This document shows, one piece after another, positions 3,106-35,567 of a stretch of 64,000 nucleotides of DNA; positions within the stretch are counted from its first letter, which is position 1, and each line of letters begins with the position of its first letter. This stretch comes from Rhodosorus marinus CCMP1338 (taxonomy: Eukaryota; Plantae; Rhodophyta): the NCBI GenBank assembly GCA_029953675.1, contig JAMWBK010000007.1:310001-374000 (forward strand), read 5' to 3'. The notes beneath the pieces are model-generated. The model was not told where the DNA came from. It searched no databases and worked only from the letters and a program-made list of their open reading frames with translations. A program made the position numbers and the translations under genes.

Positions 3106-3833
3106 TTTTGTCCTGTTCTTTTCAATTTTGCTTCTTTGTGCAGACTGTTGACGTCCTTTCACTAGCTGGACAGGTTCTAACCGTCGGCGCAGGAGCTCTG
3201 GCTGGGTTCCATCAACATAGAGAAACGGTCCCAGACAGTGTTCTGTTGAGCTACGACATATCCGCTCAAAAGACTATTCACCCGTGTTGCACTGTGCTTG
3301 AATTTCTACTGGTCATAACCACACCACCACACTGTCGAATGAAACTAGGCACTTGGCAGTGGAATCATTGACATCCAGCAAAGGCATGGGCATGAAACTT
3401 TTCCAGCCCTGGGGTTACCGCCACATTCATAGCGAGCGAAAACGGAAAGCCAAAATGCACCACATCACCGCGACCGTCAAGAACGCAACCAGGGTCGCTC
3501 TCTTCACTCTGTTCAAGGCAGTTTCACGAGCCCCGAAGAGGATCAGACGGACTAGGAACGGAACTTTAGCCTGCGAGAAAACACCAAGCAGACTTCCGAA
3601 TTTTGGATACTCTGGACAAGTATGGAGTACTGAGCGTTTGAGTTTCGCCTCTCAGTTTCAAAGATTCGAAATGACTGTTTCCACCGCCTCCTGTGCTTCT
3701 CCCGTCGCTCTCAGCCGCTCAGCAGGTGGAAACAGCTCCTTCCGTGCCTCCCACGACTCCTAGTTGGGATTGTTGACGGGCTGGTTAGCATTGGGCCGGT
3801 ATTCGATTGATCACCTTGTCAGTATTGTTTCGA

Positions 3834-5618: not shown

Positions 5619-6366
5619 AAGAACCGACGATGAGACAGTCCTCCGCGGAGCTAAACTGAGAGCACTTAGCTAACAAAATGGTGACTGGTGTGGATGGACA
5701 CATCTTACACTCTGGCGAGGCTATCCAAAAGCATCAGACCGAGTCTTCCAGGGGCTGCTTTTCCGTCGACAACTATACCAATGCGTTCGAGCCACACTCC
5801 ACTTATCGCAGGCAGAAAACAACCTAACTAATCAATGTCGTATAATACAATCCAAGCACTACATAAATATTGGAACTTTGTCCGTCCGCCAACATAAGTT
5901 CAACATTTTTACCAAATAAACGTTATAGAATACTGTTTTATGAATATACGAAAACGTTTTCCCTTTAGTACAAGCGTACGAACACATCTCGCTCGGCATA
6001 TTTAAGACATTTCTTCGTCCAGAAATAGAGAAAAAACAGACAGCTGTAGTTTTTAATTTCTATTACAATTTATATTAGACCAGTGCAAAATGGTAGCCCA
6101 AAAAGTTTAAACAAAATTGTATTTTTAGGTCTTTTTGGACGATATTTCTTTAGTTTGAGTAGTGGTGAGGGCTTTTAGGGAATCTATGTCAATCTCAGCG
6201 TTTGTGGTTTTGCGGTCACCGGCGGAGCACAATGATGAACTTTCAAACAATGTTAAACGGAACAAAGCGACTGCGGAGCATTGGGGAGGAGGAGGGCCTT
6301 TTTCGGTGGTTAGAAGTCGTAGGTATAGTATTTTGTAGAACGTCTGTGTAATGAACTGAGACCAGG

Positions 6367-7852: not shown

Positions 7853-9516
7853 AGTGATTTTTTTTTATGCTTCTCGCTTTTTGTTGTTTTGAGTCTGCGG
7901 CTTGAAGAGAGTGTCAACTCAAGCTCTTTGCTGCCGGGATGGAAAGATATCCTTAACTGGAGCATTTAGAATGTACAAGATGAACGTTGACGGGTTGAAC
8001 AAAGGCCAAGAAATTCCTCAAACAGCTGGAACACAACTCATCGGGCACTGGGCAAGTTCGCCCGGGAACCATTGCCGTCCAGAGGTGCTGAGCGATTCTC
8101 ATGGCGAACATTACTAATGAGTCTTGAGCGTCCAAGCGAGGCCCTACGTTATTCACTTCCTGACTAGAATTCCAAAACTTTGCTTGCGCAATCATACAAT
8201 AGATGTCAACCTTCCAGCCTCCCCCCGACCAACGCGGAGAAGAGTAATCGAGGATGATAGAGGGAAACTTCTGGGAGGGCAAAGCACAATTTCGGGCCAC
8301 CGTGGATGAAGCATTGACCATGAAGGAACGCCTTGGCCCAGGCAAACATGTAGCAAGTGCTCCCACCTTCCTCCTCATACTGACCATCCTTCCCCGAGCG
8401 ACCGCCACAAGCATCGCTGGGCACATACGGACCAGGGAAACAAAGCATGTCCTGGGTGGCTTGCACAGAGCATGTTGGCTAGAGAAATGTACGGGATCAA
8501 CATCCTTCATAATACAGATTTGTTGGAGCGCAAGGGCTAAACACCGGAGGTAAACTCTAGGAGCACCGCAGGTTGAACCATCAGCGCACTACCTGCACAA
8601 ATCGTGTCTGAAAGAAATGACGATTCCATGATGGTGTAGGACAAACGCGTTGCCTTCTTGCATTTGCAGTTCGAACAGGACTCGAAGCTCAACGGTTTTG
8701 GCAGTTAGTGACCTGGGTTTATAAGTAGGCTTCCTTCCGGACAATCGATATTGCCAAGTGCGAGATGGGGTCTGCGGGAGACTTTTAACGATTTGCGTAG
8801 GAAGGATCCAGAGGCGCTGTTATTGGTATTTCCTGGACCTATATCCCAATCTTTCGGTGGAATTCCGGGTCTTGACGCTATGAGGCTCGTGAAAGTGAAA
8901 TGAACCCCACTGTCGAAGACGTACCCAAGGTGGAGGAGCCCGTGTGTGAGTGTCTCCAAGTGTTGGCTCCATCAACAAAGGCGGACCACGGAGGGACTGC
9001 CGGCAGTATTTCATGATCAAAAGAAGCAATACCAGCATCAGTAGACTGCATCCAAGTCTCCCCGAATCTCGAATTTAGCGTAAGGAAACACCAACGTTTG
9101 ATGACCGCTTCGGAATCGCAGGGTTCATTACGAAATTTGACCATTTGCTAACAGTGTACGCTGTTTCGCGGAAAATGAGACAAAACTGTTCGTGGGCAGT
9201 CAGGCGATGGCGAAGACGGTATCGGAAACGTAGTCTAGGAGCACTTGCGAGTTTTGCCAACGGCGCAGCGATTCACGAGCAGTTGTCACTGGCGAACGAG
9301 CTTACCGCAGAGAGATGAAACAGAACGTTCAAGGAGATTCTTGTAAGTTTCTAGAGGCGCGAGGACCTGCTTGGGATACGGTGATAGGGATGCGAGTCAG
9401 CCGAGATGATTAAGGGAATGGATTCACTTGAAATAATGTATGGCGTGAACAAGGGAACCCGGGCGGACGCAGTCCCCAATGTTTTTGATCTCTTCGAAGA
9501 AGGAGAGTCCGTACAA

Positions 9517-9561
9517 GCGCGGAGTGAAGGAGCTGGAGCATCTGGCTCCTTCACTCCGCGC
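9517..9561. other. Perfect 17-bp inverted repeat (hairpin)
   Basis: GCGCGGAGTGAAGGAGC (9517-9533) and GCTCCTTCACTCCGCGC (9545-9561) are exact reverse complements with an 11-nt spacer. Confidence 0.9.
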
Positions 9562-10382
9562 AAGAGTCATGAAGTCCTGAAGTAGAGGGCCGATGCTTCA
9601 AAGCGACTGATAGCACGGTACTACGATTGGAATTTCGCGACGGATTCGCTGAAGGCTGGTGACTGCGTGTTGCGACGAAACGAAAACGAAAGGACAGCGC
9701 CGACTTCTTGTTCCTTTTCGGGTTTTCAGTATCGACTGACAGGAACAGTTGATAACAAGTTAGCCGAACCGAATGGTACTCCGTTGCTAATGATGGTTCA
9801 TGGAGATCAATTGAAGCGTGCGCACCGTCGTCCTAACAACAGGACGGAGGACGGTATATTCAACTTCCCTCCTATGGTTGTTGTTGTTTTTGTTGCATAC
9901 CTTGATAGACTCCGTTACCTGGAGGAGTATAGTAAACAAACTGGAAAACTTTGTCCGCACATGAGATTCATTTTCTGCTAGCAGAGCATTGAAAATATGG
10001 AAGACCTTGGCCGAAGCAAGTGCTCCGCCCTTGCTACCTTATTCCGAACATCGGCCCGCGACTATCTCGAGTCATGATCACCATCACGTGGGACATATCT
10101 GGGACAGGAGAAGAGCGGTAGTCGCGAAAGTGTGAAAACATTGGCTGCAAAATGGGGGGTCACTTTGGCCCGAGCCAAAACAAAGTAACATTGGGGAGTA
10201 TATGAAGGGCGGCAGCTCAGCTGAAGAGTTGGATAGGGAGTTGGGCAGGGAGAGGAGGAGTACTAGTAAGAGTTTTTCTGATAGAGAACTAAACTTCAGG
10301 TACCGATAAAGAAGTGAAACTCTGTGTTTTTAGTTTTTTGGTTGATGCAGGCGTAAGAGGGGCGAGATAGAGGGAGGACGGG

Positions 10383-13300
10383 ATGTTTCAGTTGGTTGGC
10401 TATGATGAGGTGTTCAATGGGGAGGTTGCAGGACTATGGAGGAAAGCCAGCGGGGCTGGCGAGAGTGGAGATGCTCATGGGATCTCTCACGTTGTGGCCA
10501 TTATGGGGCCACAGAGTAGTGGAAAGTCTACTATTATGAACCGACTGTTTGGGACTGACTTTTTTACTATGGATGAGGATCAGGGACGGTATCAGGTAAG
10601 GAGATTGAGAGCGTGCGGCGAAGGGCTAGCCTGGCTGGAAAGTTTGGTGGCTGAGTTTTTGTTTGTGTGGTGTAATTAAAGGTTACTCAAGGGATCTGGC
10701 TTGGGTTCGACCGAAAATCTGGAACAGCAGTAATTGATCTCGAAGGTACGGACAGTAGGGAAAGAGGGGAGGATGCCGTAACATTTGAACGAAAGTCTGC
10801 GTTGTTCGCTTTAGCGATCTCAGAGGTGCTCATCATCAACCTCTGGTGAGTTAAATCACCTGATTGGGCTCTTTGGAACAAACCAGAAAGCGCACGCCTT
10901 GCTCAAGCAGTAACACTTACTCTCAACGCGTCGCTGACAGGACCCAGGACGTAGGTAGACTCAACGCGTCGAACATTTTATTGTTGAGGACAGTACTGGA
11001 GCAGGACCTAGTTCTTTTCCATGACGAGAAATCAGCTCCGATGCGAACAAAGCTCCTGTTCCTCTTCAGGGACCACGACATGGCCACTCCCCTTCCACGC
11101 CTTTCCAATGTGATGAAGGAGGACCTCCAGGTAGCTGACAACCACTACTGACACAACCAAGGAATTCTCTAATCCAAATCTTGTGCGCTGAATAGGGAAT
11201 CTGGAAACAAATCACTGCAGGAACGGTCCATAATGAGTCCCAGTTGGAGGAATTTTTCGATCTAGAATTCTATGCACTCCCACACAAAGTCCTCATGCCA
11301 GAAGAATTTGAAGCTGCTTGTCTCGAACTACGTGCGAATTTCCAGAAAGAGGTGAGCTTAGTACAGTTTCCCTGCTGCGCTGTTTCCATGGAAACCAAAG
11401 GAAGTCCTTGGGTCTTCAATAGGTTCGGGGCAAATCCTGCTGCACTACTGAGGCCCCCGATGCCGGAAGAGCTCGCTCTCTCTCCTAGCGAAACTTGTCT
11501 ATCCAACCATTAGATTATTTGCCAGAGCAGCTAAGCTTGCTGGATTTGCATCCGCGAAATTCAACTTGTAACCCGGGACGTGTTTGTTTCGTTTGTCGAA
11601 ATCCACAGGATATATTCAAAAGTTCCTATGATCGTCAGCTGTCTTTGGATGGGTTCCCTGTGTTTGCGGGTGGTGTATGGGAGACGATTCGTAGGGACAA
11701 AGAGCTCGACCTCCCTGCACAGAGAGAACTGGTGGCTGTTGTACGCTGCGATGAGTTCAAGAAGGAAGCACTTGAAGCTGCCGAGGAGGAGCTGGGTGTT
11801 GTAAAAGAGGCGATCAATACTGGTGACGACACAAAGCTTGCTGCGGTTGGTGAGGATATCGGGGGGATAGTTTCCAGGGCATTCGAAGTATTCGATGAAA
11901 ATGCCCAGAGGTACCCCGAAAAGGCGGTATCGAAGAGGGCAGAGCTGGAAGCAAGTCTCTCCGCGTTGGCAACGGGAATCTTTGGTTCGCACGCGGACAA
12001 AGTCAGGCGTCAGCTGCTTGAGGCCTTTGGAACTCAGCTCAAATCCCTGACGTCTTGGAACGGGTTTGGGAAGGGCCTCAAGGGATTTGTGACAACGGCG
12101 ATGGGCAAGTTCGACTCCCTCTGCGCGACCAACGTCGATTACATTGAGCCCGAGTACAGTGCTAAAAGGGAGCAACTCTCGAGTTCGATCGAACTGCAAG
12201 CGCGGAGGTGGAGGGACTCTGCTGTGAAGTCCTCGCTACAGCAGCTTCAAGCACACTACGGATCCTCGTTTGCTCCTCCCTGTGCCGCAATTCTCGATGC
12301 CGCAGCAAAGCACGTTGACACTGTGTGGGCTCTCGTCGCGCAGCTCTCCCACAAGTCGTACAAGACTGTGAAGGAAGAGGTAAGGCGACGAACTGGAACA
12401 CTAGGGGAAAGCATTTGCTCGTCTTGCTGTCCCACCCCTCCGAGCTGGCTCCCTGATGAAACACATCTGATTTTGAATGGCCAGGCCTCGACGAGGTTCG
12501 CAACGGAAGGTCTAGCTTTGCCACCTGATGTCGAGCGTTCTGCAATAATAGCCTTGAAACTTGACTGCGAGGAAGAGACGCTGAGACAGATCCATGGACT
12601 CATTGGCTCGCCATCGCTGTTCCTCACTCGCGTAAAGCAGTGCTTTTTCGATCAGTTTAGAAACGATGCGAACGGACTACCCAGAGTATGGGGTAAGCTG
12701 CATGTGAATGCCGCCTGAGCATAATGGCACAAGGGAAAGCTGAAATGATATGAGCCTCTTGGGGTCTTTTGAGCGTTGTTTAATACTGTGTGCACAAGCA
12801 GTTCTTGTCCTGATTCAAAGCTTGCTTGTGAATGGTACTCTTCTGTAGGGCCTGACGACGACATAACGGAGGTGTATGAGAAAGCTTTGGAAGTCTCTGC
12901 CGACGTAGCAAACGCTTTAAGCACTGTGAACAGATTTGATTTGGATGATCCGGAGGTGGCCAAGGAATCTGTCAAGCACTTCGATGACGAGTGCTACATT
13001 GAGCAGATAAAGGCATCGCTACAGAAGGAGGCGGAGGCAGCGTTTGCTGAGTCGAAACGAAGCCAGGTAGGGCTCATCCAGCGTTTCGCTTTCCGTTTGA
13101 GAACAACATTATTGTCCGATGCTTATGAAAGTGCTCTGTCCTCGTTCCCCTCTTGATTCAAAACGGTAGGAGCAAATGAAGGCGCAGATGATGGGCGTTC
13201 AAGGGCAGCTTCCTGTTTGGTTGGTGGCGGCGCTAATTCTACTAGGATTCGATGAAGCGGTTTGGGTGTTGAAGAACCCGCTCCTCCTGATCCTCTGCAT

Positions 13301-18131: not shown

Positions 18132-20518
18132 ATGATAAAGAAGGCGGGGTTGGTTGTATTCGGGTCGTTTATGGAGAAGGAGGCGGGGGCTGCGGCCCCG
18201 TCTGGTAGGGAGGAGTTTTGGGCGTGTAAGGATCTTTATCCGAGTTTAGTGACGGCGGACGTGGCCGTGGAGGAGGATGATGCGAGTTTTGGTGAGGATG
18301 AGCCCGATAGAGGGGGCGCGAGGAAGTGGATGGAGTCGCTGTCTCTTCTGGAGGAGAATTTCGACTCCGCCGCGCATGAGAGGATGGCCGAGATGGAGCT
18401 GCAGAGAAAACCGCAGGACAGGATTGTGGTCGAGTTCTCTGTGGTGAAGAAGATTGGTGTGGAGGCGTGCGTCTTCATAGCGGGTTCTGACCCTCAACTG
18501 GGATCCTGGAACATCTCTGAAAACAAGAAAAACCAACTCACCTGGAGCGAAGGAAACCTCTGGCGTACCAAAATCGAGTTCAAGTTCGTCAAGAGCGACT
18601 CTCCATTCGTCTGCGAGTACAAGTACTATATACAAGCTCGGAAGGGACACTCGCATACAACGTAAGGACCGAAACGACATTCCTCAACCCTCTGGACGGG
18701 GTCAAAAAACTCCGGATTCTGTTCTTTCACTATCTCTCTCTTCTTGAGCTGCGTCGATGTCCTAGCAGTTCCAATTCGTTGGCTTAGTCCCAGCTTTCCT
18801 GTTAGCACTGATTTCCACAGGCATTCGGCCTGAAGGACAGTCTGTTTACTTTTTGCCCAACAGTGCGACTAGTCCACTTCGTCTCATTGAGTTAGCTGAC
18901 AGGTTTTCTTTTAACACTGATGTACAACGGCCTTCAGCCTGAAGGACAGCCTTTATGTACTGTTTGCTTACCGGTTCGACTGTTTCACTTCGTTGCTTTT
19001 GCTGACAAAATTTCCTTTTTAAGCACTGACCGCGAATGGAATTTGATCTGAAGGACGGTATGCTTCTCCCGTTTCCTGTGTTTTGCGTAGATGGGAGGAC
19101 GGAGTGAACCATGTCGTCATGGTGGTAGCTGGTGCTGGTAGAGATGTGAACGTGGAGGATGAGTGGGGATCATCTGGCGCGACCAAGTTTACTGAGGATG
19201 AGGTGCATCAAGTGAAGCGAACGAAGAGTCTTGGATTCAAGACGTTCCTGGAGAACGTACTTACGCCTTTGAGGCAGCGGAGGGTGGACTTCCTGGTTCA
19301 CGCGAGGACGGCCATGGGAGATGTCATGTACGTGTGCGGGAGTATTCCCGAGCTCGGGAGTTGGCAGAGGAACAGGGCGGTCAAGCTCAAGTACGGCGGG
19401 GCCGGGGAGGGAGCTGACTCGGTCTGGGGGGGCATGGTTACGCTTGAGGACGAACGGATGCAGTTTGAGTACAAGTACTTCATATTGAAGCAAGACGGGA
19501 CGAGAATTTGGGAGAAGGGAACCGATAAGAATCGCCAAGCGTTGACTTGGATGAAGCCGGAGTACCAGCCAGGTAGGATTCTCTTCGAGGACAAGTTTGA
19601 GTGTAATATTATCAACTTCAGTATATTCTACCCCGCGGGCGAGCACGAAGTCATGCACGTCACGGGTGAACCTGCGGTTATTGGCAAGTGGATGGACCCT
19701 GGACCGGTACCGATGAGGCTCGGAGTGAAGGAGAAGCTTGAAACGGACGTAGAGGGGCAGAAGTGGGAGCTTTCCGTGTTCCTCAGCCAGGAGACGAAGA
19801 GCTTCCAGTACCGCTACGCGCTGAAGAACACCGTAACAGGCTTCTCCAAATGGGAGCGCGAGCCCAATCGAGTCGCAAACTTAAACAACCTGCAGCCAGT
19901 CAACAGCACTTTCTTCCTACGCGACGTTAACTTTGTTGCGGACATGCAGTTCCACGAGTGCCCACCGGATATGTTCATAGGGCCGTACCCACAGACCACG
20001 GCGGACATAGACGAGATGGCAGAGGCTGGAGTAACGGCCGTCCTCAATGTACAGACTGATGAGGATTTCGATCACAGGCAGATCGATTGGGAGACACTTC
20101 TAGAACACTACGAGAAGCGAAATATACAGGTATGGATTCGCGCAATATCCGTCCAAGAGTTTCCTCGGCTCTGTCGACGTTAACACGCCAAATTCACCAC
20201 GCTTGCTTTTCTCTTATCTGCAATGTGCTCTAGGTCGTTCGCTGTCAGATTCGAGATTTCGATCGGAACAGTCTTCGAGAGCGGCTGATGAGTGCGGTGC
20301 GCGTGCTCGACGTGTTCCATATGGAAGGGAGGAAGTCGTACATCCACTGTACTGCGGGTATGGGACGTGCACCCGCAGTAGTTGTAGCATACTTGGTTTG
20401 GGTGAAGAAGTGGAACCTTTATGACGCCGTGCAGCACGTCAAGACGCACAGACCCGTTGCGGTACCGAACGTACCAGTCCTCGAGGAGGCGCTGAGGAGC
20501 AAATACACACTGTACTAA
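18132..20518 (+). CDS. Laforin-type glucan phosphatase: three CBM20 starch-binding domains + dual-specificity phosphatase
   Basis: Three CBM20-like blocks: GSDPQLGSW...EYKYY...WEDGVNH; GSIPELGSW...EYKYF...WEKG; GEPAVIGKW...QYRY...WEREPNR. DSP motifs FIGPYPQ, VLNVQT, IRDFD and HCTAGMGRAPAVVVAYL. Introns 18662-19090 and 20130-20233 restore the frames. Confidence 0.93.
18760..19057. repeat. Degenerate ~109-bp tandem repeat (about 3 copies) inside intron 1 of the glucan phosphatase gene
   Basis: CACTGA at 18806/18915/19024 and CTGAAGGAC at 18830/18939/19048, each exactly 109 bp apart. CA(A/C)TTCGT at 18772/18875/18986. Confidence 0.8.
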
Positions 20519-23136: not shown

Positions 23137-24608
23137 GCATCCTGCAGAATTTCTAGTGTCTTTACCTCGGGTTTTATCTTTCGCGCACTGCGTTACTCTA
23201 GTCGCTTTGCTGCATAGACTGGCTACGGCCGCCCTGGCTTGTATTCTTTGGATCGTAGTACCTGCTCATTAAACACCACCGCCAAATGTTCGGGCGTGTG
23301 TGCTCACGTACGGCGTCTTTCAGCGCTCAAGCGCTAGATTTCCAGTGCCATAAGCTTAGTCCTTTGACGCGCTGAGCACAGGAACGATACAGCCCAGGCC
23401 AAGCACACCACAGCTCGGTGTCTCGGGCTTTCGAAAGCGTGCTTATCACCAACTTCACCACTTACATACGCTAAAAATCCTCTATGTTGTGAACAGCGAG
23501 AATTGATTTCTCGAAATGTAGAATTTACATAAAAAATTTAACTAAATGGCTCGCATGGAAACTCTACATGACTCGTGAAGTAGATTTTTAATAAGGAAGA
23601 TTCTTCGGTCGGTCGAGGGCGGCTTGAGCTCAGTGCCGGAGCCTTGTGAGTAGGCGTTAACAACGAGCGTTCGATTTGTCTTCATTCAGCCAAGCTGGTG
23701 AATGATAAATGATCCTATGTTCAAGTACTAGAGCTTCTAATGACAGTCTTTGGAGAGAAGTTTGGTGAGATCCTCCTGCCACTCGAACTACGCTCTCAAA
23801 CTCTGAGGAAAGTTTTCCGTCAACGAAAATTTTTTTCGTTCCCTTTTTTGTACCCGTCTCAGACATGGCCTTGAAAAACGCGCCCTGGACCCAAATTTTA
23901 TACACATTTTTGCTTTGTGCGAAATTGTGAGACTCCAAGGGGGGGAGGGTGGGGAGGGGTTAAGTCGAAGGCCCTTCCACACGGGAAAATTTGCCACGAT
24001 TAGCTTTTTTTTGCTTGGCCCGCGTCTTTGGGAGTTGGGAAGTTTTACGTCGGGGCAAGGTGACAGGATACGTGCGAGGAAATTTTGGGAACATTGGCTT
24101 CAGAATCATGTTTTCTTGGATTTTTGGGAGGGGTGGAGTTTGACTGGGCCAATGTGAGGTGTAACATTCGTGGGTGGCGGTCGATGATAAAGGTTGAGAC
24201 GTCTTCGACGAAGTTCGGGGGAGACAGATGAGGAGGAGGTAGTGAGGCGGAGCACGTTGTGCTAGAGTAGTATCTTTGTTTTGTTTGGGGGGATGGGGGG
24301 GGAGGGAGGGAGGGAAGGAGGGGCAGGCGAGAGTTTTTCAATGTTTTAGATTTTTTGGCTTGCTTGCTTCGGGTTGTTTTGACCCTGCTGGGGTCACACA
24401 CATCAGAAGGAATGTTCTTGAGCAACCTTCTCGGTGGCTGAGAGAGAGTGGGAAAGCTGGAATTTTTGGGGGGCAGGAAAGGATCACGTGGACTGGGGGG
24501 GTTTCACTTTCTCCTGTAAGGAAGGTGTGTGCCTGTTGCCTTTTTCGAGGAGCACCCCCGAGGAATTGGATATTTGGGGTACCCGATAGCTGAGTAGTAT
24601 AAGTCACG

Positions 24609-27600
24609 ATGGGAAAGGTTCGAACGAAAAAGCCTGTGGCTCCGGTATGTGAACTCGCTCAAGACGTTTTGCGCACCTCGAACAGGGGTCTGCGGGTGCC
24701 CGGCGAGGGAGGGGCGCAGCATTCGCTAACTTTGAATACGTCTTTTCAACCTTTCTCAGCCGCCTTTCATGCTGGATACCATAAACAGCATTGTTCAGTG
24801 CACAGACGATGAGCAACTACTGTCGATTCTGAAACGATTTGAAGCTCCTTTTCGGTTCGAGAGGGTAAGCTGGTTCTGGATGTGCTTCATCTACTTCGGG
24901 ATTTATTTGTATTTTGACACCAGTGCCTTTGCATGTGCCCTAGGCTGGAGAGAGGAGTTTGTATAATTGGATAGATGTACTTAATCGTATTGATGAAGCG
25001 CTAGAGAAATGTATAGGCAATGAGCCGATGGTGCTCTTGCTCTCCAGCTCAGAAGTAGTCCCGGATGACGAGATCGATGATATTACTCCACGGAAGGAAA
25101 ATTCGGAGTTAATCTATCACTGTCTTCGAGTTACGCTTTTGCTTGTATCAAACGCCTCTGATGACACCAAGAATGTGTATAACTCTGTGGAGGTACGTAT
25201 ACAGCAAAATCTCTGCAAGCTGCTTTTACCGTCGTTGATCCACCATGCGTCAAAATTCGCTTCTCTGATCCGAGTTCTTCTTTTTGGGATAGTACCTGGG
25301 AGATCTGCTGGCAATGGAGGACGAGAAGATCATTCTTCTGGCTCTTGAGATAATCCGATCCTTGTTGCATGGGAATTCAAGGCTGCGACCAACACGGGCT
25401 CATGAGAGCCCGAAGCTTGGGAATATGTTGCTTACCCTTTCACGAGGTTGTTGGGAGAGAGAGGGTGGGCCTGGGCTTGTTGAATGTCTCAGCTCACCAA
25501 CAGTAGCCTTGCCAAGTGAAGGTGGATCAATTCGTTTGTACTTTATGAAAAAGGAGGGCTCTGGTGCCCAGGCGGAGGTTAATGGTAAGCGAAGCTCTAG
25601 CCCTCCTCAGGACGGAATAGTGGCACTTGTAAGTACCTGACGCACGTTGGATCGTTTGAATTTGCCTAGATGCAAGCGTGGAATACGAGACGATGAACCC
25701 CAATGGAAAGAAATCCGTCGTGAGTGTCGATGATGTTAGGACGTTGGCCGGCGATGAGAAATGGTTTATTAAGACCTATTCGAAAGAATTTGACCTTCCG
25801 CGAAGACTTCGGTTCACCATGTCGACACGTTACCGCCGAGCACGGGCGTTTGTTGGGGGATTGGAGGCCAGAACCAGGCACACTAACGTTCGGCTGCTCG
25901 CGCTTGCGACACTAGCGCAAATGCAGTTGTCCCCTGAACCCCTCACGTTCGTATTCTACAGTGAACCAGAGCTTGTGTCGGAATTGGTTGCTCTCTCTCG
26001 TGCGGACGCTGCGGATGGTCTTGCCGACCTACCACTATTTATCCGGATCTCAGCTCTCAAGTGCCTTACCTCAATATCAAACCATGGACAGAGGTTGAAG
26101 CAAGTTATCTCGATCACTGACGTCTCTTCACATAATGGTATCCTGCCGTCGATGCTGAGGTCGGAGATAGCGTTACTATTCAACCGAAATGCTAGTCAAC
26201 AGCCGTCGAAAGCAGAGTTTCCGATGGATTGGGTTGCTTTGAGAGGAATTGAGGGCGAATTTGCACAGGCGGACATTGTCGAAGCTCTCCTAGGGCTGGT
26301 GTTCGCAATTGCCACAGCTTTTCCCATGTCGCAAGGGCCAACCTTTCTTGTCGCTTCAGGCGCTGTAGGTACCATGGTACCTTTGTTGAACGACAGAACA
26401 CCCACGAATTCCAGAGTAGTACTGCACGCGATTTGGGCGTTAAAATGCATCATTGAGAACACTCAAATTTCAACTGGGGCTGCAGCCTTTAGAGACCACT
26501 CAGGCCTTACTTTAATTGCGAGAAGAATAGTGACAGAGGTTTGCGAGTTTGGTCCCAAGGACTTGGAGGATGCGGATGAAGGGGTTGAAGTAGGAGTGCT
26601 TGAAATGAGGGGTGAATCAAGGGAGTTGTATGACAGCCTTGCGCAGAAGGTTCAGCCTCCACCATCTCACGCTCTGAAGACCATGGCCCCAAGCTCTTCA
26701 GCAGCGTCGCGAGGGGCTTTGCCACATTTCAAGTGGGCGCTCTTGAGGGCGCTTCTGCGGCTACTCTCACTTGCGCATCGGAACTCGGGGGGTAGCATTC
26801 GCGAGCTCACTGGGGAGAACTTCTTGAAGGCGCTAAGGATAATTTTGGCAAGACCGTTTTACTTTGGCGGAAGCCTGTTCGCGGCGTCAGCCACTGCCAC
26901 AGCTGACATGGCTCATGCCGAGCCCACTGCAGCGTCGACAATTGCTGAGTCTGGACTTCCACAAGCCATTCTGAAGTCAATAGCCAAGGGACTTCCTCCT
27001 TCTGGTGAAGCTATAAGATGCATTCCAGGTGTTTTGGCTGCAATATGCCTCTCCCCGGCAGCCCTGAAGGATGTAGAAGCTGCAGCGGTCATAATGCCCT
27101 ACATGATGAGACTTTTCACTCCGTTTTATGGCAGAGCTATGCACGGTGAAACCCCTCTCGGAATAGGCACAGCATTGGAGGAGCTCAAGAGACATGTGCC
27201 TTCGCTGCAGATCGAGATTACGAACGCTTTCTTGATGTTCTTGCAGTCGGTAGCGAAGTTCATACGAACTGAAGAGCCTGATTCAGAGTCCACAGATGCG
27301 GACGTCTGCGATGTCGAGAATCCACCGGCCACGGATTCGAAAGCAATGATCGACAAGATGAAGCTCACTGTGGCGTACAATGCGTCGCGACTGGGAGGTT
27401 TTGTGAGCGACATATCAGATAAGGACTATGCGGCTACCCGATCGACCTTGATAAGTTTGTTGGATATCTGCTATGCTCCTGCATTTGCGGGGATTGATTC
27501 GGGAGTTGTCAGCGTGTCTTCATCGTCGCCATCAGCTCCCACGGCAAGCAACACACTGAACTCGATCATCAATGCGATTCGTCGCTTGGACATCAACTTC

Positions 27601-30600
27601 TCTGGTCATTTGTGCAGCTTGCTTTCTGAGCATTTTGTACGTGACACTGAAGCTTTTCTTTACGTGGGGACGAGGTTAGGCGAGAATTGGCTTGACGAGG
27701 AGACCGGCAGAGGATTTCCGTTAAGGGAGCACTCAAACGTAGCCAACGAAGAATCGAGAGAGGATCCAGACTCAGGGACAGAGCCGGTCGAAATCGACTC
27801 GCTACCAAAGGAAGCGGAACCATGTGAAGGGAGTAGTCACAGCCTCGATCAAGCTCCGGCCGACAGTTCCAGTAGAAGCAATGTGGCTGCGAACGTTGTT
27901 GATTGGGCACGCCTAACTGGCCCGAACAGGAGCAGGAGATACCACCAGAGGCGACTGAACGAGTTAGCAAGGAAGCTGCGAGTGAACATTGTCATCTTGA
28001 GTGGGCTTCCCAGAATGCATGATTTTGCCATTGGGTATTGGGGGATAACCGTGGCGCAACAACTGGGAGCAATTATAGCTACCATGGAGAGGGCGTGCAG
28101 GTGGCACCTTGCAAGGGCATTCACTGGTGTGACAGTTGAGATGACGAAGGAGCCTGACTACTTCTTCTCGGCGAAAGTGACCGCAATGAGTAGAAGTCCA
28201 CCGGAGGCCCCTGAGGATGGAACTAAGCATGCGAAGGACGCGGTAGCTAGCGGCGCTGAGACTAGCTCGGGAATGCATGGGAAGAGCAATGCTGAGAAAC
28301 CAGAGCTTGCTTCTAATCGTGAGGAGTTGAATGGACTCGCGTGGTCACTGGCGACGCTCATCGCGTCAACGGAGCGCCTGTATAGGACTTTATCGCGTGA
28401 TTTGACGGCGAAAACGAAGAAGACGTCATCGCGGGAGACGGTGTCTGACAAGGATGTTGACAGCATAAAGAACCTCGCCTCCATGCTTGGCAGGATATTG
28501 ACTACGAACTTGGTTTCTTCTGTTACCATGTGGACCAATGATGATGAGAAGGAGGTGCAGAACTGTTTGGAAGCACCTGAGGCCTGGAATTACTTGCGGG
28601 GGGTACTAAGGGAGATTCGAACTGTACTGTTTGCAAACCCCTGGGGTGATGCGCCGTCGCAAACTCAGCCACTAGTCCTGGAGGCTTTTCTGATGTGGGG
28701 AGGAGGATGCTTCCTTCAGAAGATTCTGTCCCCCCAGGCTCTGCTAGCTGCGACCAAGCCAATACGACCGCTGGCGGAGAACGGGTTCACTAGTGCGGCA
28801 TGGTCGAGCAACGAAGTAGGAGATCTCAAGCAGAGGTCAGATACGGATGCATCAACAAGAGTGCAGGAGCAGGGGGGTGTTTCCAAGTCGAGTCTGATAG
28901 AAGAACACCAGAACGCTCTGATGGTAACTACCGTGATCGACGTCTTGGAATCATTTGGACAGCTTATCTACCGACTGTGTGACTGCGACGGATTGTCGAA
29001 CAGCAATGCAGACTTGTCAAGAATCTGCAAATGGAAAGCTCAAGAGCTTCATCGCACGTCTCAGGTAGTAGCAATACAAGCTCTTGGGAGCATCCTCCAA
29101 GACAACAACGCAATTCTTTGCTCGGACAAGTTACGCGACCAGGTGATTTCGTTCCTCATTGTTTTGATTCACAAAATTGTCGACACACGAGAAGCACTGG
29201 AAAAGGAAGATCGCGGTGCGGCAAATGATATCGATCACGGGGCAGATGGAATGCGTAGACCAAGTGGGGACTGGGGTTTAGACACTGCGTTGCCTGAAAA
29301 CTCGATGCTAACGAGGCTGGTAGGAATGGGTTTCCGGCGTGAGAGAGCTACTTCTGCGCTTCTGAGAGCGGGTCAAAACGGCATCGTGGGCGCGACGGAG
29401 TGGTTGCTTTCGCAGGAGGATGCTGCAAATGAGGATGCGGACGATGCAGAAGACTCGGATGCTCACAATCTTCCGGGAGAGCCATTGAACGGAGGTAGTG
29501 ATATGGAAATCCAAACCGATCAGTCTGTGCTTTCTTCGACGATCGTGAAAGCTTGCTGTTTGTACGAAATTCAGCAGCTGGAGAAGGCGGTAATGATTCA
29601 CGAGAATCAGCATACAACACCTGCTGACGTGAAGGCGATAAAGGAAATGGTCAGGTCGTTTCTTCCTGCTGATTATGTTGACGACAAGAAGGGCAGCTTC
29701 GTCGACAAAAGGAAGTCCCTAGAGCAGCGGAAAACTAGCCCGATCACGAGGCACACCTACCAGGAGACCGTCCAGTCCTTCTTCATATCGCTCAGAGCTC
29801 TTGCGATTTCCGCGGTTAGGCTCTTGTGTAGCAAAGGCGCTTCAAAGGATTCTGCGTATCTTGTCGTCGATCTGAGCACAGCGCTGGAGAAGGGATCCGA
29901 GCTTGACGAGGACTCACAGGAAGTGTTTGCGTCGATTATCATGTCAAGTTTTTCAGGTGTCCTTCAAGACGTTTCCGCTATGAAGCCCTCTGGCGTGATT
30001 GGGAAAGAGCAGAGCACGAAGATCTTTAATATGGCTCAGATAGCTACTGTATGGACCCACCTGGGAGGAGCAAATGCGAGGGAACGGATACGGAAGAAGG
30101 ATGGCCTTGTGTTAATAGTGGACTTCTTGGAGAAGAGCTTCACCCGGTTTTGGGAGGCAAACGGAGCACACTTGGGAGTGTCTCTAACTGATGAGGAGGC
30201 GGCAGAGCCCATTGAAGGCTTAACGTTGACAGAGGAGGGTGGCAGCATGAAGCAAAGAGAGTCAAACGAGTCGGTTACAGTGAAAGAAGCTACAGCTAAG
30301 GTGTGCGCAATGGCTTTGTTGATTCTGGACGGCTTCATTCGCTACTCGAGGACGGATACCTTATCCGAGTTCAGCTCTTCAATCGCGGAGAGCTTGCGTC
30401 CGGACTCCACCTCACGTCCCGGTGAGAGCAAAGCAGCTTCCGAAGCTGATGAGAAGATGGCGGACAGTAGTGCAAGTCGTCCTGAATCCGACAAAACCCT
30501 GGAGGACATTGACGCCGAAGCCAAGGCGAACCTTGAATTGAGGATATCTCAGCTAATCCTGAAGTTGGAACCGGTCACTGTTGGAAAGGGTGTCAAAGGC

Positions 30601-31740
30601 ATCGACTCAGCGGAGATAATGGATATGCTTTTGAAGATGCTGGCCTCACCACTAGCCGAGAATCCGGATTGCTTCATTGCGCTGATACAGATGGCCTGTG
30701 GGTTGACCGAGGACTTCGAGACGGGTAGAATGTTCCTTCAGCGCGGAGGCGTAGAGCTGATTTGGTCGGTCCGGAACGTGAAGAGCTTGTCATGGAAAAA
30801 CGTCAACGGCCTGTTTAGGACGTTGCTAAGGCATTTAGTCGAGGACGACGACACCTTACTGGAAGCGATGGAACAGGAAATTAGATCCCTGCTCAGCGCA
30901 AACCGCTTCTCTAGCCGTTTGAATCTGTTGGGACTGGTGCGGCTCGCGCTTCCGGTTCTACACCGGGATCCAGAATTGTTTGTGAAGGCGGTGGCTAAGA
31001 CCTGTCGACTCAACCCGAGTTTGGAAGCCATAACCGTGCCCGAAGCATTGCCGAAAGTACATGGGGACATTGGTTGGAACGTGCACGAAGTAGTGAGAAT
31101 TCTCGTGGATGGAATGGTTTTGGAACGATACTCGCCTAATCTATCCGAACAGGATTACATGGCCGCTTTGAAGATTACTTCCATAGCATTGTTGAGAGTC
31201 ACGGAGCTCGTGGAGTGGTCGAGCACCTGTGCGAGTGCCTTCCTAATGGCGAAAGTTCGTGCTGACAGTGAAACAGACGCTTTTGACTACGTCTTGAATA
31301 ATCTTCTACCGCTACCCCCTCGCCATCCGCCACCAAAGGAACGCGCGACGTTTGGAATGTTGGAGGACATTTCCGAGGCTTCACGCCAGCTTTTCACAGC
31401 GCTTTGCGGCGTAGGCAGCCACGTGCGAGCGAGAGCAGTTGAAGCGATGGCGAGGGCTTGCGCGCGGGAGGCAGAATCGGAGAATCCTCGAGCGGGGATG
31501 CTGAAGTCAATCGCGATGTGTTTCGCGTTGCTGAAGGAGGAAGCAGTTGCTCTCCTGTTCAAACTCGGCATAGTCGCCAGCATGGCAAGATGCCTGGACA
31601 AGCTGGACTTGAGCGGTGTAGAGGCGGGAGATACGGGGAACGCAGTGCTCAAATCGTTTGTACTCTTAGGACAAGTGGCAACGAATATGCCACCTAGTCA
31701 GAACAACTCTGACGGGACAAGCGAGCCTGAAGCAATGTAG
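24609..31740 (+). CDS. HUWE1/Tom1/UPL1-like protein (DUF908 + DUF913 ARM regions + UBA), no HECT domain
   Basis: N-terminus MGKVRTKKPVAP|...TDDEQLL...LYNWIDVLNRID and YLGDLLAMED...LALEI match the HUWE1/UPL1 start. DUF908-like EPELVSELV, SHNGILPSML. DUF913-like FGGSLFAASA...HAEPT...IAESGLPQAIL, ELKRHVPSL. UBA MLTRLVGMGFRRERATSALLRAGQNGIVGATEWLL. The 2020-aa last exon ends at TAG 31738-31740. Confidence 0.9.
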
Positions 31741-32603
31741 TGGGAAGCTAGATCGTACTCCTGCGAAGATCAACGGATATCTCGCCCTGTAGGACACGTG
31801 CAAAACTAATTAAGAACGTTGGAAGAGAGTGTATATAAAGTGACTTGTTTTGAATAGCAAGCTGTTTTCGTCCGCATGAGGAGTTCCGGTACTCGGCCGA
31901 AGCGCAAGCCGTTGTCCCGCTTTGTATCGGGATGCGTTGCTTCCCCACATCGGGAACCCAGGCTTGCTAGCTGTTCGCATAGGCCGAGGTAGTCAATGAG
32001 CGAGTTGGATAATTAGCTTTTGCCTGTGCCTCCCACTACAGTGGGTTTCCCCCCCCCCCAATGGGTGTCCAAGCAGGGCAGTCGTTTAGGAAGACTATCA
32101 AACGTACATATGGTCGAAACTAAAAGGTACATAAAGATGTTTACTGATGAAGAAAGCACGCGTCCCTGTAGGACTGTGTTTCTTGACTACATATGGATGG
32201 AGGCCAACATGTTGTTCTCCCCGAAACGGTTGAGTTGTTACGCATATACAAAAAAAAACAAACTGAGAAACACACAAGGACAGGTACAAAAAAAGTGAAA
32301 AATACAAATTGCCTGGGATCAGTCTCGGCAACAAGATAGCCCACAACTAGGTGAGCCTTTCGGAAAAAGGGATGCCAAACGCTCCGCCGCTATGTGAAAC
32401 TGGACGACGTGGGGCTGCTGTGTGCCTGCCGTCATCGAGCATTAATAAATGTACAACAAACGAGTCTTGTCGCAGCTGGTATTGCCGCAGGGCACAAAGC
32501 TCAAGAGTTCCGTCTTTCTCCACCCAGGTACCCCAGCATTTGACTTCCAATAGGCGGGCGTACGGGGTCTTGATGTTCGTCCAATCCCGTCCCATGACTC
32601 CGC

Positions 32604-33375
32604 TCAGTGCGCTTTCAAGTCCATGGCTCGTGCTTGGAGAACCTGGGGAGCTCGTGTGGCGGTCCCTCGGCATTCCTCCTGCTCCTCGCAATTGTTGGAA
32701 ACCTCTGACTCATGGTCCACTTGGTCCAAGGTCTTCTTCGGCAGTCGCTTGTGCTTCAATCTCATTCTCGTCATGTTCCGATATTTGTCCTTCAGATCGA
32801 CCGGTGTTCGCTTCCCATGGAACGGGAAGCTCATCAGAATCTTTTTCCAGCTGCCGACACCAAACTGACTGACGCCCTCCGCTAGATATCTCTCTTCTTC
32901 TTGAGAGAATCTAGTGTAGCTCTGTCTTCGTGAACTGCGAGGTCCAGACGAGGGGGAACTTGAGGCTGAAACTAACCTCTTCGCATGCTGAATCGATCTG
33001 TGAGCTTGCAATTCTGCGCCTGTGAACAAGATTGCATCCGACACAAACTCAGCATTTCTGTTGCAAACTATTGATAGTGATCGCGCGGGGAACTTTACCG
33101 TTGCTTTGCCTGCCGGAAATCGCTGTTCGCGGCCTCCTCGAAGTCGGGTGGGGCTTGGGATCTGCAGGAACCAACGACTCCAGAGTTCCCTCGCTGGAAT
33201 TCTCGTTTCTCATATCCGCTCCACTCGAACTTCCCGCGGGATGCGTCGCAACACTACACAAAATCTCCAACGCCGACATTCCATTTTGATACCCATGCTC
33301 CATTGCCATCAAACCACCACTAACCCCTCCTCCTCTCCCACTACCATGTTCGGCCCCCCAGTCCCGCACCATCAT
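32604..33375 (-). CDS. TRF-like (telobox) single-Myb protein; 2 exons
   Basis: FSQEEERYLAEGVSQFGVGSWKKIL..FPF...RTPVDLKDKYRNM resembles the telobox LKDKWRN. First exon contains ALEILCSVA. Start is uncertain. Confidence 0.85.
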
Positions 33376-35567
33376 CGCCCTTCCAAAATCAAAACCTCTC
33401 AGCCCGATCAGCTCACCACCATACACTCTCTCTCCCATCACGCCTCTCCAATCACAGAAATCCTCACAACTCCAACATACACACACACACACACACACAC
33501 TCACAACCAGCTCTCCTCTCCAATCCATACTTCACTCAACTGCCCATCCCCTTCACTATGCCCTCTTTAAGAACCCTCAAAAACTCCCAAACTAACCCTG
33601 AAACGCATCCCCTCCCAAAATTCCTACTCGGGAACCTCTCAATTCTTAAAAATATAATAACATTTCCGCACTAATTTTCCCCCGGGCGGCTTTTTCTTTG
33701 AAAGGTTGGTTTTTTCAGCCAACCAAACGAAAAGGCGAAATAGATCTCTTCGTCCGAGTTTAACGGGGGTAATATTTATAAAGGAATAGGAGGAGGAGAA
33801 AGAACAGGGGGTGTTTTTTTAGTATTGAAACGTGTGCAATTTATGAATAACAGAACTTCTATGATCGAAATAAAGTCCATTGTAGGGTAGCGGAAGTAGG
33901 GGGTGGAAGAAGTGATTATTTGGGATGTGGAGAAGGGGTGTGGTAGTGGGGAATGATTTTTACGAATTGAATGGAAAAAAAATTGGATTGACGAAAAACG
34001 TCCATCACTCTATAGACAAAAAAAAGGAAAAAAGGAAAAAATATCACTTAGATATTTTCTGGTATCGTGGGAGGGTATTTCCATGGATAAAACGAGGGGT
34101 GATTTGTACGAAGGCTAGTGGCGACCGTTTATTATATTTTGTAAATATTAGAGACGTTATTGAATTTAATGAGGTGTATACACTAGAGGGGTTGAAGAAT
34201 GCGTTCTCCCCCATGTGCTTGGTGGCTGGTGAGCTTACCCTCGTATTGATTTACTTAATTTTTTGGGGGTGATCTAGGATATTTTGTCGAAACGAGGGTG
34301 TGAAGATTGTAAAAAACAAATTGGAAGGGGGGCAGTTATCTAACACTGATGTGTTTTTTTTTGGTTTTGTTGTTGTTTTTGTTACATACTTTTTTTACGT
34401 TGAAAAAGTTCTTCGAGAAAGAAGCCATATGAATTATTTTTTACGTTTTGCCGTTGTTTTTTGATTAGGAGACTTGCACTAGATTTTTTTTTGACGGTTG
34501 GACCTCCCCCCTAATACGATCATAATAGGAATGCACGGCAAAAGTCGATCTCAGCATATAAGGGGGGAGAAGGGTTTACTTTTTTTATCGTTTTCGTCAC
34601 TAAAATTTCTTTTATACAATAAATGTGTTTTATTCTAGAGAAATGCAGAATCTACCCCCACTCCCCGGGGCCCTCTCCTCAATAGAAACATACCACCCTG
34701 GCCACCCCTTTTCTGGAAATTCTAGTAGCACTACGACTAATGGATCTCCGCTCAAGTCAGAGAACCCTATCTTGCTTGGTTTGGATTCGTCTAGAGGTAT
34801 TAGCCAATAATCATCAGTGCCATGTACTATATCCGAATTTTATCCAATGAAATTTGGTTTCATTGGATATTATTTTTTTCTAGATGTTCATTGGTGTATC
34901 AACGAGCACTCCTTATTTCGTAGGAGAGTCATGAGTGGCGGTTGTTCCAAATGCAATTTGAAAACTATTTTCGTACAATTTTTAGATATTGATCCGGACC
35001 TTGGAAAAGAGGCTGATCTCGAAGACACACAAGACAGAGAGCCGACTTCCAAAATACAGAACCGAATAATATATAATTATATATATAATTATCAACCAAT
35101 CATGTAATATATTTAATGATATTATTTAGAATATCATTCCGGCACAATCCCAAGAAACCAATGAATTTCTCTCTGCCGTTTGGTATTGAACCATAGGATA
35201 CTCGCGACTTCGTATCTCATCCCTTTTTTGTTCCATTTTATGATTTACTTTATTATCCAATTGCTGCAATTCTTTAGAAAAAGAGATTGGTTTCAGCCAC
35301 TGGATCCTCTGCCGTTGGTACTAATCAATCCCTCCTCCTCCGCTCACTTCTAAAAAAATCCATATTGGTGGCTATTAGTACAAATGTACCGATCATTAAA
35401 AAAAAATTTGGTTTCTTCAATGTGTATCTTGTACTACTGAATTGAAACACACCCCTCCTCTCCCTTCCTCCCCCCCCCGCAACCGCCCGGCTACTCCATC
35501 CTCCCTTTTCTCCATTGGCAGTGAAAAAAAAAGGCCCGCACCTATGTATTTTTCATGGTGCAACGGA

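What the first reader, a model, noticed from the sequence alone, without database searches (positions are those of the whole stretch)
24609..31740. HUWE1/Tom1/UPL1 homologue that ends before the HECT domain: ligase-dead scaffold or split E3 gene
Established: HUWE1/Tom1/UPL1 are ~3,300-4,400-aa E3 ligases whose ARM ring closes on a C-terminal HECT with the catalytic Cys. Seen: an intact ~2,250-aa frame with the N-terminal ARM regions and UBA. It stops at TAG 31738-31740, about where the acidic disordered linker would begin. There is no convincing donor site, no HECT motif downstream, and a convergent Myb gene ends ~860 bp away. The lack of frameshifts or stops over 6 kb argues for selection. 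Inference: either gene fission, with the ARM4/HECT half encoded elsewhere and the ring assembled in trans, or a catalytically inert paralogue acting as a ubiquitin-binding adaptor or dominant regulator.
Basis: partly seen in the sequence, partly recalled or inferred. Interest (0 to 1): 0.78.

Follow-up and report, generated by a model that had tools for sequence, protein, structure and literature searches.

The report
Red-algal HUWE1 ligase split into two genes
This Rhodosorus marinus gene really does encode only the scaffold (N-terminal) half of the giant HUWE1/Tom1/UPL1 ubiquitin ligase; other red algae carry the same truncated gene plus a separate gene for the catalytic half, so the enzyme appears to be split into two genes in this lineage.

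Summary
It is a 5-exon gene (24609-31740, +) encoding 2250 aa with DUF908, DUF913, UBA and an ARLD3-like ARM solenoid. There is no UBM and no HECT. The stop is real. A transcript from another R. marinus strain is colinear with the genome through the TAG and 155 nt of 3'UTR. dN/dS is 0.27 overall and 0.18 in the last 250 aa. The protein ends at the same motif in Bangiopsis, Compsopogon, a Pyropia-like contig and several unnamed contigs presumed red-algal.

That terminal motif aligns to human HUWE1 ~2230-2262, the last ordered segment matched before its acidic disordered insert. Separate proteins of 1441-2142 aa (Met, usually an acidic run, then UBM and a Cys-bearing HECT) exist in Porphyridium, Galdieria, Cyanidiococcus, Gracilariopsis and Pyropia. 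They align to HUWE1 2649-4374. In Gracilariopsis lemaneiformis two "UPL1" genes of matching sizes (2617 and 1436 aa) lie on different chromosomes.

The best reading is an ancient gene fission at the acidic linker. Assembly of the two products in trans is inferred, not shown. I could not retrieve the Rhodosorus catalytic half. I found no paper describing this split. Novelty: new variant of a known kind. Interest about 0.6.

The parts
24498..24608 (+). 5' UTR (minimum extent)
   Evidence: The MMETSP0011 R. marinus transcript L006 aligns from window 24498.
24609..24644 (+). Exon 1 coding part (start codon ATG at 24609)
   Evidence: The exon chain translates exactly to P0001. The transcript alignment agrees.
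24645..24759 (+). Intron 1 (115 nt, GTATGT...CAG)
24760..24864 (+). Exon 2
24865..24943 (+). Intron 2 (79 nt, GT-AG)
24944..25192 (+). Exon 3
25193..25292 (+). Intron 3 (100 nt, GT-AG)
25293..25584 (+). Exon 4
25585..25669 (+). Intron 4 (85 nt, GT-AG)
25670..31740 (+). Exon 5 (6071 nt), coding to the stop codon
   Evidence: The transcript is colinear over the whole exon. The mechanical ORF is 25678-31740.
25783..26166 (+). C-terminal part of DUF908 (ARLD1); the N-terminal part of ARLD1 lies in exons 1-4
   Evidence: Pfam PF06012, E 2.4e-23 on the full protein. The family profile aligns to human HUWE1 50-371.
26464..27279 (+). DUF913 (ARLD2)
   Evidence: Pfam PF06025, E about 4e-39. It matches Tom1 502-690 and HUWE1 about 506-738.
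29296..29436 (+). UBA domain, followed by a short acidic stretch
   Evidence: Pfam PF00627/PF22562. It aligns to the HUWE1 UBA region.
30625..31677 (+). ARLD3-like ARM solenoid, homologous to human HUWE1 about 1771-2262
   Evidence: Profile against PDB, E 2e-16. In the AF2 model of aa 1500-2250 this segment is mostly pLDDT 80-95. The model's best Foldseek hits are HUWE1 7jq9 (E 1.8e-8) and Tom1 9dnt.
31591..31677 (+). Terminal conserved motif CLDKLDLSGVEAGDTGNAVLKSFVLLGQV, the last part of the protein conserved across the family
   Evidence: The motif region is shared by the N-half proteins. It aligns to the HUWE1 stretch 'HSLDLSS...NAALKPLETLSRIV' at about 2230-2262.
31738..31740 (+). Stop codon TAG, conserved in a second R. 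marinus strain
31741..31895 (+). 3' UTR (minimum extent), colinear between transcript and genome

Best explanation
The gene encodes the N-terminal scaffold half (ARLD1, ARLD2, UBA, ARLD3) of the red-algal orthologue of HUWE1/Tom1/UPL1. An ancient gene fission cut the ancestral ~4000-aa gene inside the acidic, disordered linker that separates ARLD3 from the UBM/ARLD4/HECT part. The two pieces now sit at unlinked loci. The N-half has its own stop codon and 3'UTR. The C-half has its own ATG, usually an acidic N-terminal run, UBM repeats, an ARLD4-like region and a HECT domain with the catalytic Cys.

Shown: the N-half is intact, expressed, under purifying selection and conserved in length across red algae. 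C-half-only genes exist in other red algae, and together the two halves cover most of HUWE1 without overlap.

Inferred: Rhodosorus also has the C-half gene. Also inferred: the two polypeptides re-associate non-covalently to rebuild the ring, so that the N-half supplies substrate and ubiquitin binding (UBA) and the C-half supplies UBM and catalysis. From my own knowledge of the published HUWE1 structures, not from a tool result, likely contacts would be solenoid stacking at the ARLD3/ARLD4 junction and a ring-closing contact between ARLD1 and ARLD4/HECT.
For: Gene model and identity.

The stop is real:
- Transcript L006, from another strain (88.5% nt identity), is colinear through the TAG and 155 nt of 3'UTR.
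- The other R. marinus, Bangiopsis and Compsopogon products are annotated 'type:complete' and end at the same motif.
- The Bangiopsis and Compsopogon transcript contigs carry sequence beyond the stop.
- dN/dS is 0.27 overall and 0.18 in the last 250 aa.

Genomic contigs of relatives end the same way with unrelated downstream genes.

The two halves are complementary:
- The N-half profile aligns to human HUWE1 from about residue 50 to about 2283 in native numbering.
- The C-half profile aligns to HUWE1 2649-4374 at 828 bits.

C-half-only proteins:
- Porphyridium purpureum 1441 aa, Galdieria phlegrea 1635 aa, Gracilariopsis chorda 1735 aa.
- Pyropia vietnamensis 2142 aa, Cyanidiococcus yangmingshanensis 1660 aa.
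- All five contain only UBM + HECT by Pfam and keep the LPS[AS]HTCFN catalytic motif.

The C-half is a separate gene:
- One unnamed C-half (P0165, locus L025) has an in-frame stop 42 nt upstream of its annotated ATG (another in-frame ATG lies between), and stop-filled DNA further upstream.
- In Pyropia its upstream neighbour is a TRP-domain gene.
- None of 16 C-half loci contains N-half homology.

Local HMMs show that N-halves lack C-half homology and vice versa. Of 147 HUWE1-type representatives, 67 are fused, and none of those has the red-algal HECT signature ARL[VI]MF[VI]TG[TS]SK[VI]P. All 12 that carry it are C-only.

Gracilariopsis lemaneiformis has GlUPL1-2 (2617 aa, chr 2) and GlUPL1-1 (1436 aa, chr 27) (PMC10506303 Table S2).
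Against: - The C-half of Rhodosorus itself was not retrieved.
- No single genome was shown by my own sequence analysis to hold both halves. The Gracilariopsis pairing rests on a published table of names, sizes and positions.
- Physical association of the halves is untested. HECT domains work on their own in vitro (established knowledge), so the halves could act separately.
- The unnamed contigs are presumed red-algal only from similarity and SRA-run proximity.
Confidence: 0.72

Rival explanations
1. Fission followed by functional divergence. Both genes exist, but the products do not assemble. The C-half works as a stand-alone UBM-HECT ligase. The N-half works independently as a ubiquitin-binding ARM scaffold, adaptor or regulator.
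For: The N-half keeps a UBA domain and is under purifying selection on its own. C-half-only HUWE1-type proteins are reported or seen in other lineages, such as Naegleria lovaniensis P0202 and the heterokont/alveolate DUF4414-HECT families (PMC3673628). That suggests the catalytic half may be viable alone. Isolated HUWE1 HECT domains are active in vitro (established knowledge).
Against: The N-half has kept its full set of ARLD1-3 regions, and its end at the ARLD3 boundary is conserved across classes. This is expected if it still has to dock to ARLD4. No new domain has been gained by either half.
Confidence: 0.18
2. Ligase-dead orphan. Rhodosorus (or Stylonematophyceae) has lost the catalytic half, and the N-half survives as a non-catalytic scaffold.
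For: No Rhodosorus C-half was found with the tools available.
Against: The failure is one of access, not a negative genome search. C-halves are present in Cyanidiophyceae, Porphyridiophyceae, Bangiophyceae and Florideophyceae, which bracket Stylonematophyceae phylogenetically (the phylogeny is my own knowledge).
Confidence: 0.07
3. Artefact or trivial cause: a misassembly at ~31.7 kb, a truncated annotation, a recent nonsense allele, or a full-length protein made by splicing, trans-splicing or readthrough.
For: None found.
Against: Three R. marinus transcriptome sources and the genome agree, and one transcript was aligned across the stop into the 3'UTR. The assembly is long-read, with 13 contigs over 1 Mb. 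The same end is seen in other genera and classes. The next in-frame stop is 23 codons after the TAG, and there is no HECT in 32 kb downstream.
Confidence: 0.03

Closest known systems
Human HUWE1 (4374 aa; PDB 7jq9, 9plr)
   Same: There is co-linear homology of ARLD1, ARLD2, UBA and ARLD3 (profile E 1.4e-69). The C-terminal 751 aa fold best onto HUWE1 (Foldseek E 1.8e-8). The terminal motif equals HUWE1 ~2230-2262.
   Different: The protein ends at the equivalent of about HUWE1 residue 2283. It has no UBM, ARLD4 or HECT on this polypeptide. No WWE domain was detected by Pfam.
Yeast Tom1 (3268 aa; PDB 9egk, 9dnt) and Arabidopsis UPL1/UPL2 (~3700 aa)
   Same: It belongs to the same family. DUF913 matches Tom1 502-690 and ARLD3 matches Tom1 1541-1719. 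The red-algal C-half HECT ranks among the best representatives for the Arabidopsis UPL1 C-terminus, with 46-59% identity over the matched stretches.
   Different: Tom1 and UPL1 are single polypeptides. Here the scaffold and catalytic parts are separate genes.
Gracilariopsis lemaneiformis GlUPL1-2 (2617 aa, chr 2) and GlUPL1-1 (1436 aa, chr 27), PMC10506303 Table S2
   Same: The sizes match the N-half and C-half families. GlUPL1-2 lies next to an RCC1-type gene (GlHERC5), as do the N-half genes in contigs L001 and L002.
   Different: The paper lists them as two UPL1 genes without noting that they are complementary halves. I could not read their sequences.
DUF4414(UBM)-HECT families HECTHe3 (heterokonts) and HECTAl1 (alveolates), and 'single HECT' green-algal UPL1/2 (Grau-Bove et al. 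2013, PMC3673628)
   Same: These are HUWE1-type HECT proteins lacking DUF908/DUF913, the same architecture as the red-algal C-half.
   Different: That survey started from HECT domains, so HECT-less N-halves were outside its scope. Rhodophyta are not named among the HUWE1-like families in the passages I read. Whether those lineages have matching N-half genes is unknown.

Membership tests
HUWE1/Tom1/UPL1 family (HECT class VI) | N-terminal DUF908 (ARLD1) and DUF913 (ARLD2) | tested here: met
   Pfam E 2.4e-23 and 4.3e-39. Profile match to HUWE1 and Tom1.
HUWE1/Tom1/UPL1 family (HECT class VI) | Central UBA domain | tested here: met
   PF00627/PF22562 at aa 1437-1483.
HUWE1/Tom1/UPL1 family (HECT class VI) | ARLD3 solenoid homologous to HUWE1 ~1770-2260 | tested here: met
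   Profile E 2e-16. Foldseek best hit is HUWE1.
HUWE1/Tom1/UPL1 family (HECT class VI) | UBM (DUF4414) repeats | tested here: not met
   No PF14377 in P0001. It is present in the separate red-algal C-halves.
HUWE1/Tom1/UPL1 family (HECT class VI) | C-terminal HECT domain with catalytic Cys on the same polypeptide | tested here: not met
   No PF00632. A transcript ends at the TAG. No HECT in the window. No C-half-profile match in any N-half protein.
Split (fission) orthologue of a multidomain gene | Two gene products cover complementary, non-overlapping parts of the ancestral protein | tested here: met
   The N-half aligns to HUWE1 from about residue 50 to about 2283. The C-half aligns to HUWE1 2649-4374. 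The two are mutually exclusive by HMM. This was tested across red algae, not within Rhodosorus.
Split (fission) orthologue of a multidomain gene | Both halves are encoded in the same genome at separate loci | tested here: inconclusive
   Gracilariopsis lemaneiformis has genes on chr 2 and chr 27, known from a published table only. In Pyropia the N-half and C-half come from different species or contigs. The Rhodosorus C-half was not retrievable.
Split (fission) orthologue of a multidomain gene | No fused copy in the lineage | tested here: inconclusive
   None of 67 fused representatives carries the red-algal HECT signature, and all 12 carriers are C-only. Only the best 150 representatives were seen.
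Split (fission) orthologue of a multidomain gene | The products associate to restore the ancestral architecture | not testable with these tools
   This needs multimer structure prediction or biochemistry.

The most novel reading that the evidence does not exclude
The two-gene HUWE1 is not a red-algal oddity. It may be a widespread, ancient state: a ring E3 built from a scaffold subunit and a catalytic subunit. On this reading it was present at the base of Rhodophyta, since C-half-only genes occur in Cyanidiophyceae. It may also be shared with, or transferred to, other lineages that have UBM-HECT-only genes (heterokonts, alveolates, Naegleria, perhaps green algae). The break at the acidic loop would then mark a natural subunit boundary of the HUWE1 ring.
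Probability: 0.25. Interest if true: 0.75.

Novelty: new variant of a known kind. Interest (0 to 1): 0.6.

Why it matters
HUWE1/Tom1/UPL1 ligases are studied as single giant polypeptides whose ARM ring positions the HECT domain over bound substrates.

- **A natural experiment.** A split at the acidic loop, conserved across red-algal classes, would test whether the ring can be assembled from two subunits. It would also show which contacts hold it together, and whether scaffold and catalytic parts can be regulated separately through stoichiometry, expression or localisation.
- **Annotation.** HECT-based surveys count only the catalytic half and miss the scaffold half. Automatic names such as 'HECT-type E3 ubiquitin transferase' for a HECT-less protein (Compsopogon) are misleading.
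- **Practical use.** It suggests where human HUWE1 or yeast Tom1 could be cut to give two more tractable, co-expressible pieces.

Tried and rejected
1. Looked for the catalytic half next to the N-half. The 64-kb window and contigs L001-L008 hold no HECT or C-half. The second ORF on the Compsopogon transcript contig is importin-like by its sequence (my reading, no domain search run), not HECT. The ORF after the Pyropia-like N-half looks like GC-rich noise.
It matched a database entry at 100% identity over the full query. Only proteins of 206-629 aa were returned, so the candidate step seems tied to query length.
3. Tried to shift that window with a 1500-aa query made of shuffled filler plus a real UPL1 C-terminus. 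This gave 8000 candidates and no hit.
4. Considered deriving peptides from the published GlUPL1-1 primers. They do not begin at the start codon and look like UTR primers, so this was dropped.
5. Scanned JGI contigs with a degenerate DNA pattern for the red-algal HECT signature. This gave 14 environmental loci, none from the MMETSP Rhodosorus, Bangiopsis or Compsopogon samples.
6. Rejected readings: recent nonsense allele, misassembly, downstream splicing and stop-codon readthrough.
7. Searched the literature for a described split of HUWE1 (DUF908/DUF913/HECT; 'HUWE1' + 'gene fission'; HECT/Rhodophyta/UPL1). Nothing was found.
Full report
**Observation.** The window is nuclear DNA of the red alga Rhodosorus marinus. 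The long ORF is 100% identical to NCBI 'hypothetical protein NDN08_004304', 2250 aa, on a 2.2-Mb contig. Joining five exons through four GT-AG introns reproduces that protein exactly. The exons are 24609-24644, 24760-24864, 24944-25192, 25293-25584 and 25670-31740. Pfam finds DUF908, DUF913 and UBA, but no UBM and no HECT. The convergent Myb ORF ends 864 bp downstream.

**Is the stop real?**
- A 7020-nt transcript from another R. marinus strain (MMETSP0011, 88.5% nt identity) aligns in five blocks that define the four introns. It then runs colinearly through the TAG into 155 nt of 3'UTR. This transcript therefore does not splice on to further exons.
- Products from two further R. marinus transcriptome sources, from Bangiopsis sp. 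CCMP1999 and from Compsopogon caeruleus are annotated as complete ORFs. They end within about 30 residues of the same conserved motif. The Bangiopsis and Compsopogon contigs carry sequence beyond the stop.
- Between the two R. marinus strains dN/dS is 0.27 overall and 0.18 in the last 250 codons.
- The genome is a long-read assembly with 13 contigs over 1 Mb (PMC10250338).
- Misassembly, a recent nonsense allele and missed exons are therefore excluded.

**Breadth.** The same HECT-less architecture occurs in genomic contigs of further relatives (P0005-P0013, 2510-2939 aa). I presume these are red algae because of their similarity and their neighbouring SRA run numbers. All end at or shortly after the same motif. 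Their downstream genes are unrelated to HUWE1. Where a downstream gene was annotated it was an abhydrolase followed by an RCC1-type gene. In the other two contigs only a few hundred bases follow the gene. A Pyropia-like contig encodes a 3317-aa version that ends in an acidic tail.

**Where it ends relative to HUWE1.**
- A profile of 12 family members aligns co-linearly to human HUWE1 over ARLD1, ARLD2, UBA and a C-terminal block (E 1.4e-69).
- A profile of only the last ~370 residues aligns to HUWE1 1771-1895 and 2034-2282. The terminal motif (aa 2202-2230, CLDKLDL...VLKSFVLLGQV) sits on the HUWE1 stretch 'HSLDLSS...NAALKPLETLSRIV'.
- Immediately after that point HUWE1 enters its disordered, acid-rich insert. 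The only matches there are compositional.
- An AlphaFold2 model of aa 1500-2250 (mean pLDDT 70.8, all-helical) finds human HUWE1 (E 1.8e-8) and yeast Tom1 as its best PDB matches.
- The protein is therefore ARLD1 through ARLD3 of a HUWE1 orthologue, cut at the acidic loop.

**The other half.**
- An exhaustive HMMER search of 1.84 billion cluster representatives with the Arabidopsis UPL1 C-terminus returned 150 HUWE1-type proteins.
- Many are 1100-2000 aa, start with Met (in many cases followed by an acidic run) and end with HECT.
- The named ones include Porphyridium purpureum KAA8495039.1 (1441 aa), Galdieria phlegrea (1635 aa), Gracilariopsis chorda PXF44012.1 (1735 aa), Pyropia vietnamensis (2142 aa) and Cyanidiococcus yangmingshanensis (1660 aa).
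- Six unnamed contig-derived proteins cluster with them.
- The five named proteins contain only UBM and HECT by Pfam. All 11 keep the catalytic LPS[AS]HTCFN motif.
- Their profile aligns to human HUWE1 2649-4374 in one 828-bit stretch. They are therefore the UBM/ARLD4/HECT half, not just a HECT domain.
- Local HMMs show no C-half homology in any N-half and no N-half homology in any C-half. A HECT signature, ARL[VI]MF[VI]TG[TS]SK[VI]P, is present in all 11 red-algal C-halves. It is absent from all 67 fused full-length representatives.

**The halves are separate genes.**
- In locus L025 the C-half ORF (P0165) has an in-frame stop 42 nt upstream of its annotated ATG, with another in-frame ATG between. 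The DNA further upstream is full of stops in all frames.
- In the Pyropia vietnamensis genome the upstream neighbour of the C-half is a TRP-domain gene.
- None of 16 C-half loci contains N-half homology.
- A published table for Gracilariopsis lemaneiformis lists GlUPL1-2 (2617 aa, chr 2, next to an RCC1-type gene, as in L001/L002) and GlUPL1-1 (1436 aa, chr 27) (PMC10506303). Their sum is about 4050 aa, the size of a full HUWE1.

**What was not shown.** I could not retrieve the catalytic half of Rhodosorus itself. The word-indexed protein search returned only proteins of about the query's length. An attempt to get round this failed and used the last search. A signature-pattern scan of JGI contigs returned only environmental contigs. 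The presence of the C-half in Rhodosorus is inferred from its presence in Cyanidiophyceae, Porphyridiophyceae, Bangiophyceae and Florideophyceae. Physical association of the halves is also untested.

**Mechanism.**
- Best reading (0.72): an ancient fission inside the acidic linker produced a scaffold gene and a catalytic gene. I infer that their products re-associate into the ring. From my own knowledge of the published HUWE1 structures, the acidic insert is a loop emerging from a continuous solenoid, and the ring is closed by an N-terminal/C-terminal contact. Two interfaces would then be available to hold a heterodimer together.
- Rival (0.18): the halves now act independently.
- Rival (0.07): Rhodosorus has lost the catalytic half.
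- Rival (0.03): artefact.

**Comparison and novelty.** By sequence and fold this is a HUWE1/Tom1/UPL1 orthologue. It fails the defining feature of a HECT E3, because it has no HECT on the polypeptide. It should be annotated as the N-terminal (scaffold) subunit or fragment, not as a 'HECT-type E3 ubiquitin transferase'. Grau-Bove et al. 2013 described UBM-HECT-only HUWE1-like proteins in heterokonts and alveolates, and HECT-only ones in green algae. Because that survey started from HECT domains, HECT-less N-halves were outside its scope. The Gracilariopsis paper lists both genes without comment. Full-text searches found no description of a split HUWE1. I rate this a new variant of a known kind, with interest about 0.6. 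It is a clean, conserved and testable natural split of a much-studied giant enzyme, but gene fission itself is an ordinary evolutionary event, and the key biochemical claim is still inference.

Noticed in passing
P0202 (Naegleria lovaniensis, 1549 aa), P0017 (Volvox reticuliferus, 3215 aa), P0063/P0067 (green-algal HECT-only models): The split architecture may not be confined to red algae. A Naegleria protein starts with an acid-rich N-terminal region and ends with HECT. A Volvox N-half-like protein ends in an acidic region without HECT. Several green algae have HECT-only gene models of about 400 aa. Some of these could be annotation breaks.
   Followed up: partly
L005 (Compsopogon caeruleus transcript contig, 10703 nt): 322-6903, 7283-9658, 9852-10274: One transcript contig carries the N-half ORF followed on the same strand by importin-like ORFs of 791 and 140 aa. 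The importin-like call is from reading the sequence, with no domain search. This is either a read-through or overlapping transcript in a compact genome, or a chimeric assembly.
   Followed up: partly
window 33600-35500: An AT-rich stretch follows the Myb gene. GC is 0.40 in the 34-36 kb bin, against about 0.50 elsewhere. It has many homopolymer runs and a (CA)n microsatellite at about 33478-33500. No ORF of 120 aa or more lies in it. Its nature is not determined.
   Followed up: no
window 32604-33044 (-): A convergent ORF has a Myb DNA-binding domain (PF00249, E 4.4e-9). Its stop lies 864 bp from the TAG of the HUWE1-like gene.
   Followed up: partly
window 19083-20183 (+) and 11495-12718 (+): There is an ORF with two CBM20 starch-binding domain matches (E 2.5e-24). 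Another ORF has Sey1/RHD3 three-helix-bundle and GTPase-end matches and is probably one exon of a larger gene.
   Followed up: no
tool behaviour: the search for homologous proteins returned only proteins within about 0.57-1.73 times the query length. A 363-aa HECT query matched a 621-aa fragment at 100% identity over the full query, but none of the best 120 listed was a full-length UPL1. A padded 1500-aa query found no HECT protein at all. Negative results from that tool should be read with this in mind.
   Followed up: partly
L011-L024 (JGI/ENA/GenBank metagenome contigs): Fourteen environmental contigs carry the red-algal HECT signature motif. Some lie on long contigs of 131-159 kb. Three (L017, L020, L021) match the Galdieria C-half best, at 51-63% identity, so some may be environmental Cyanidiophyceae-like genomes.
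   Followed up: partly
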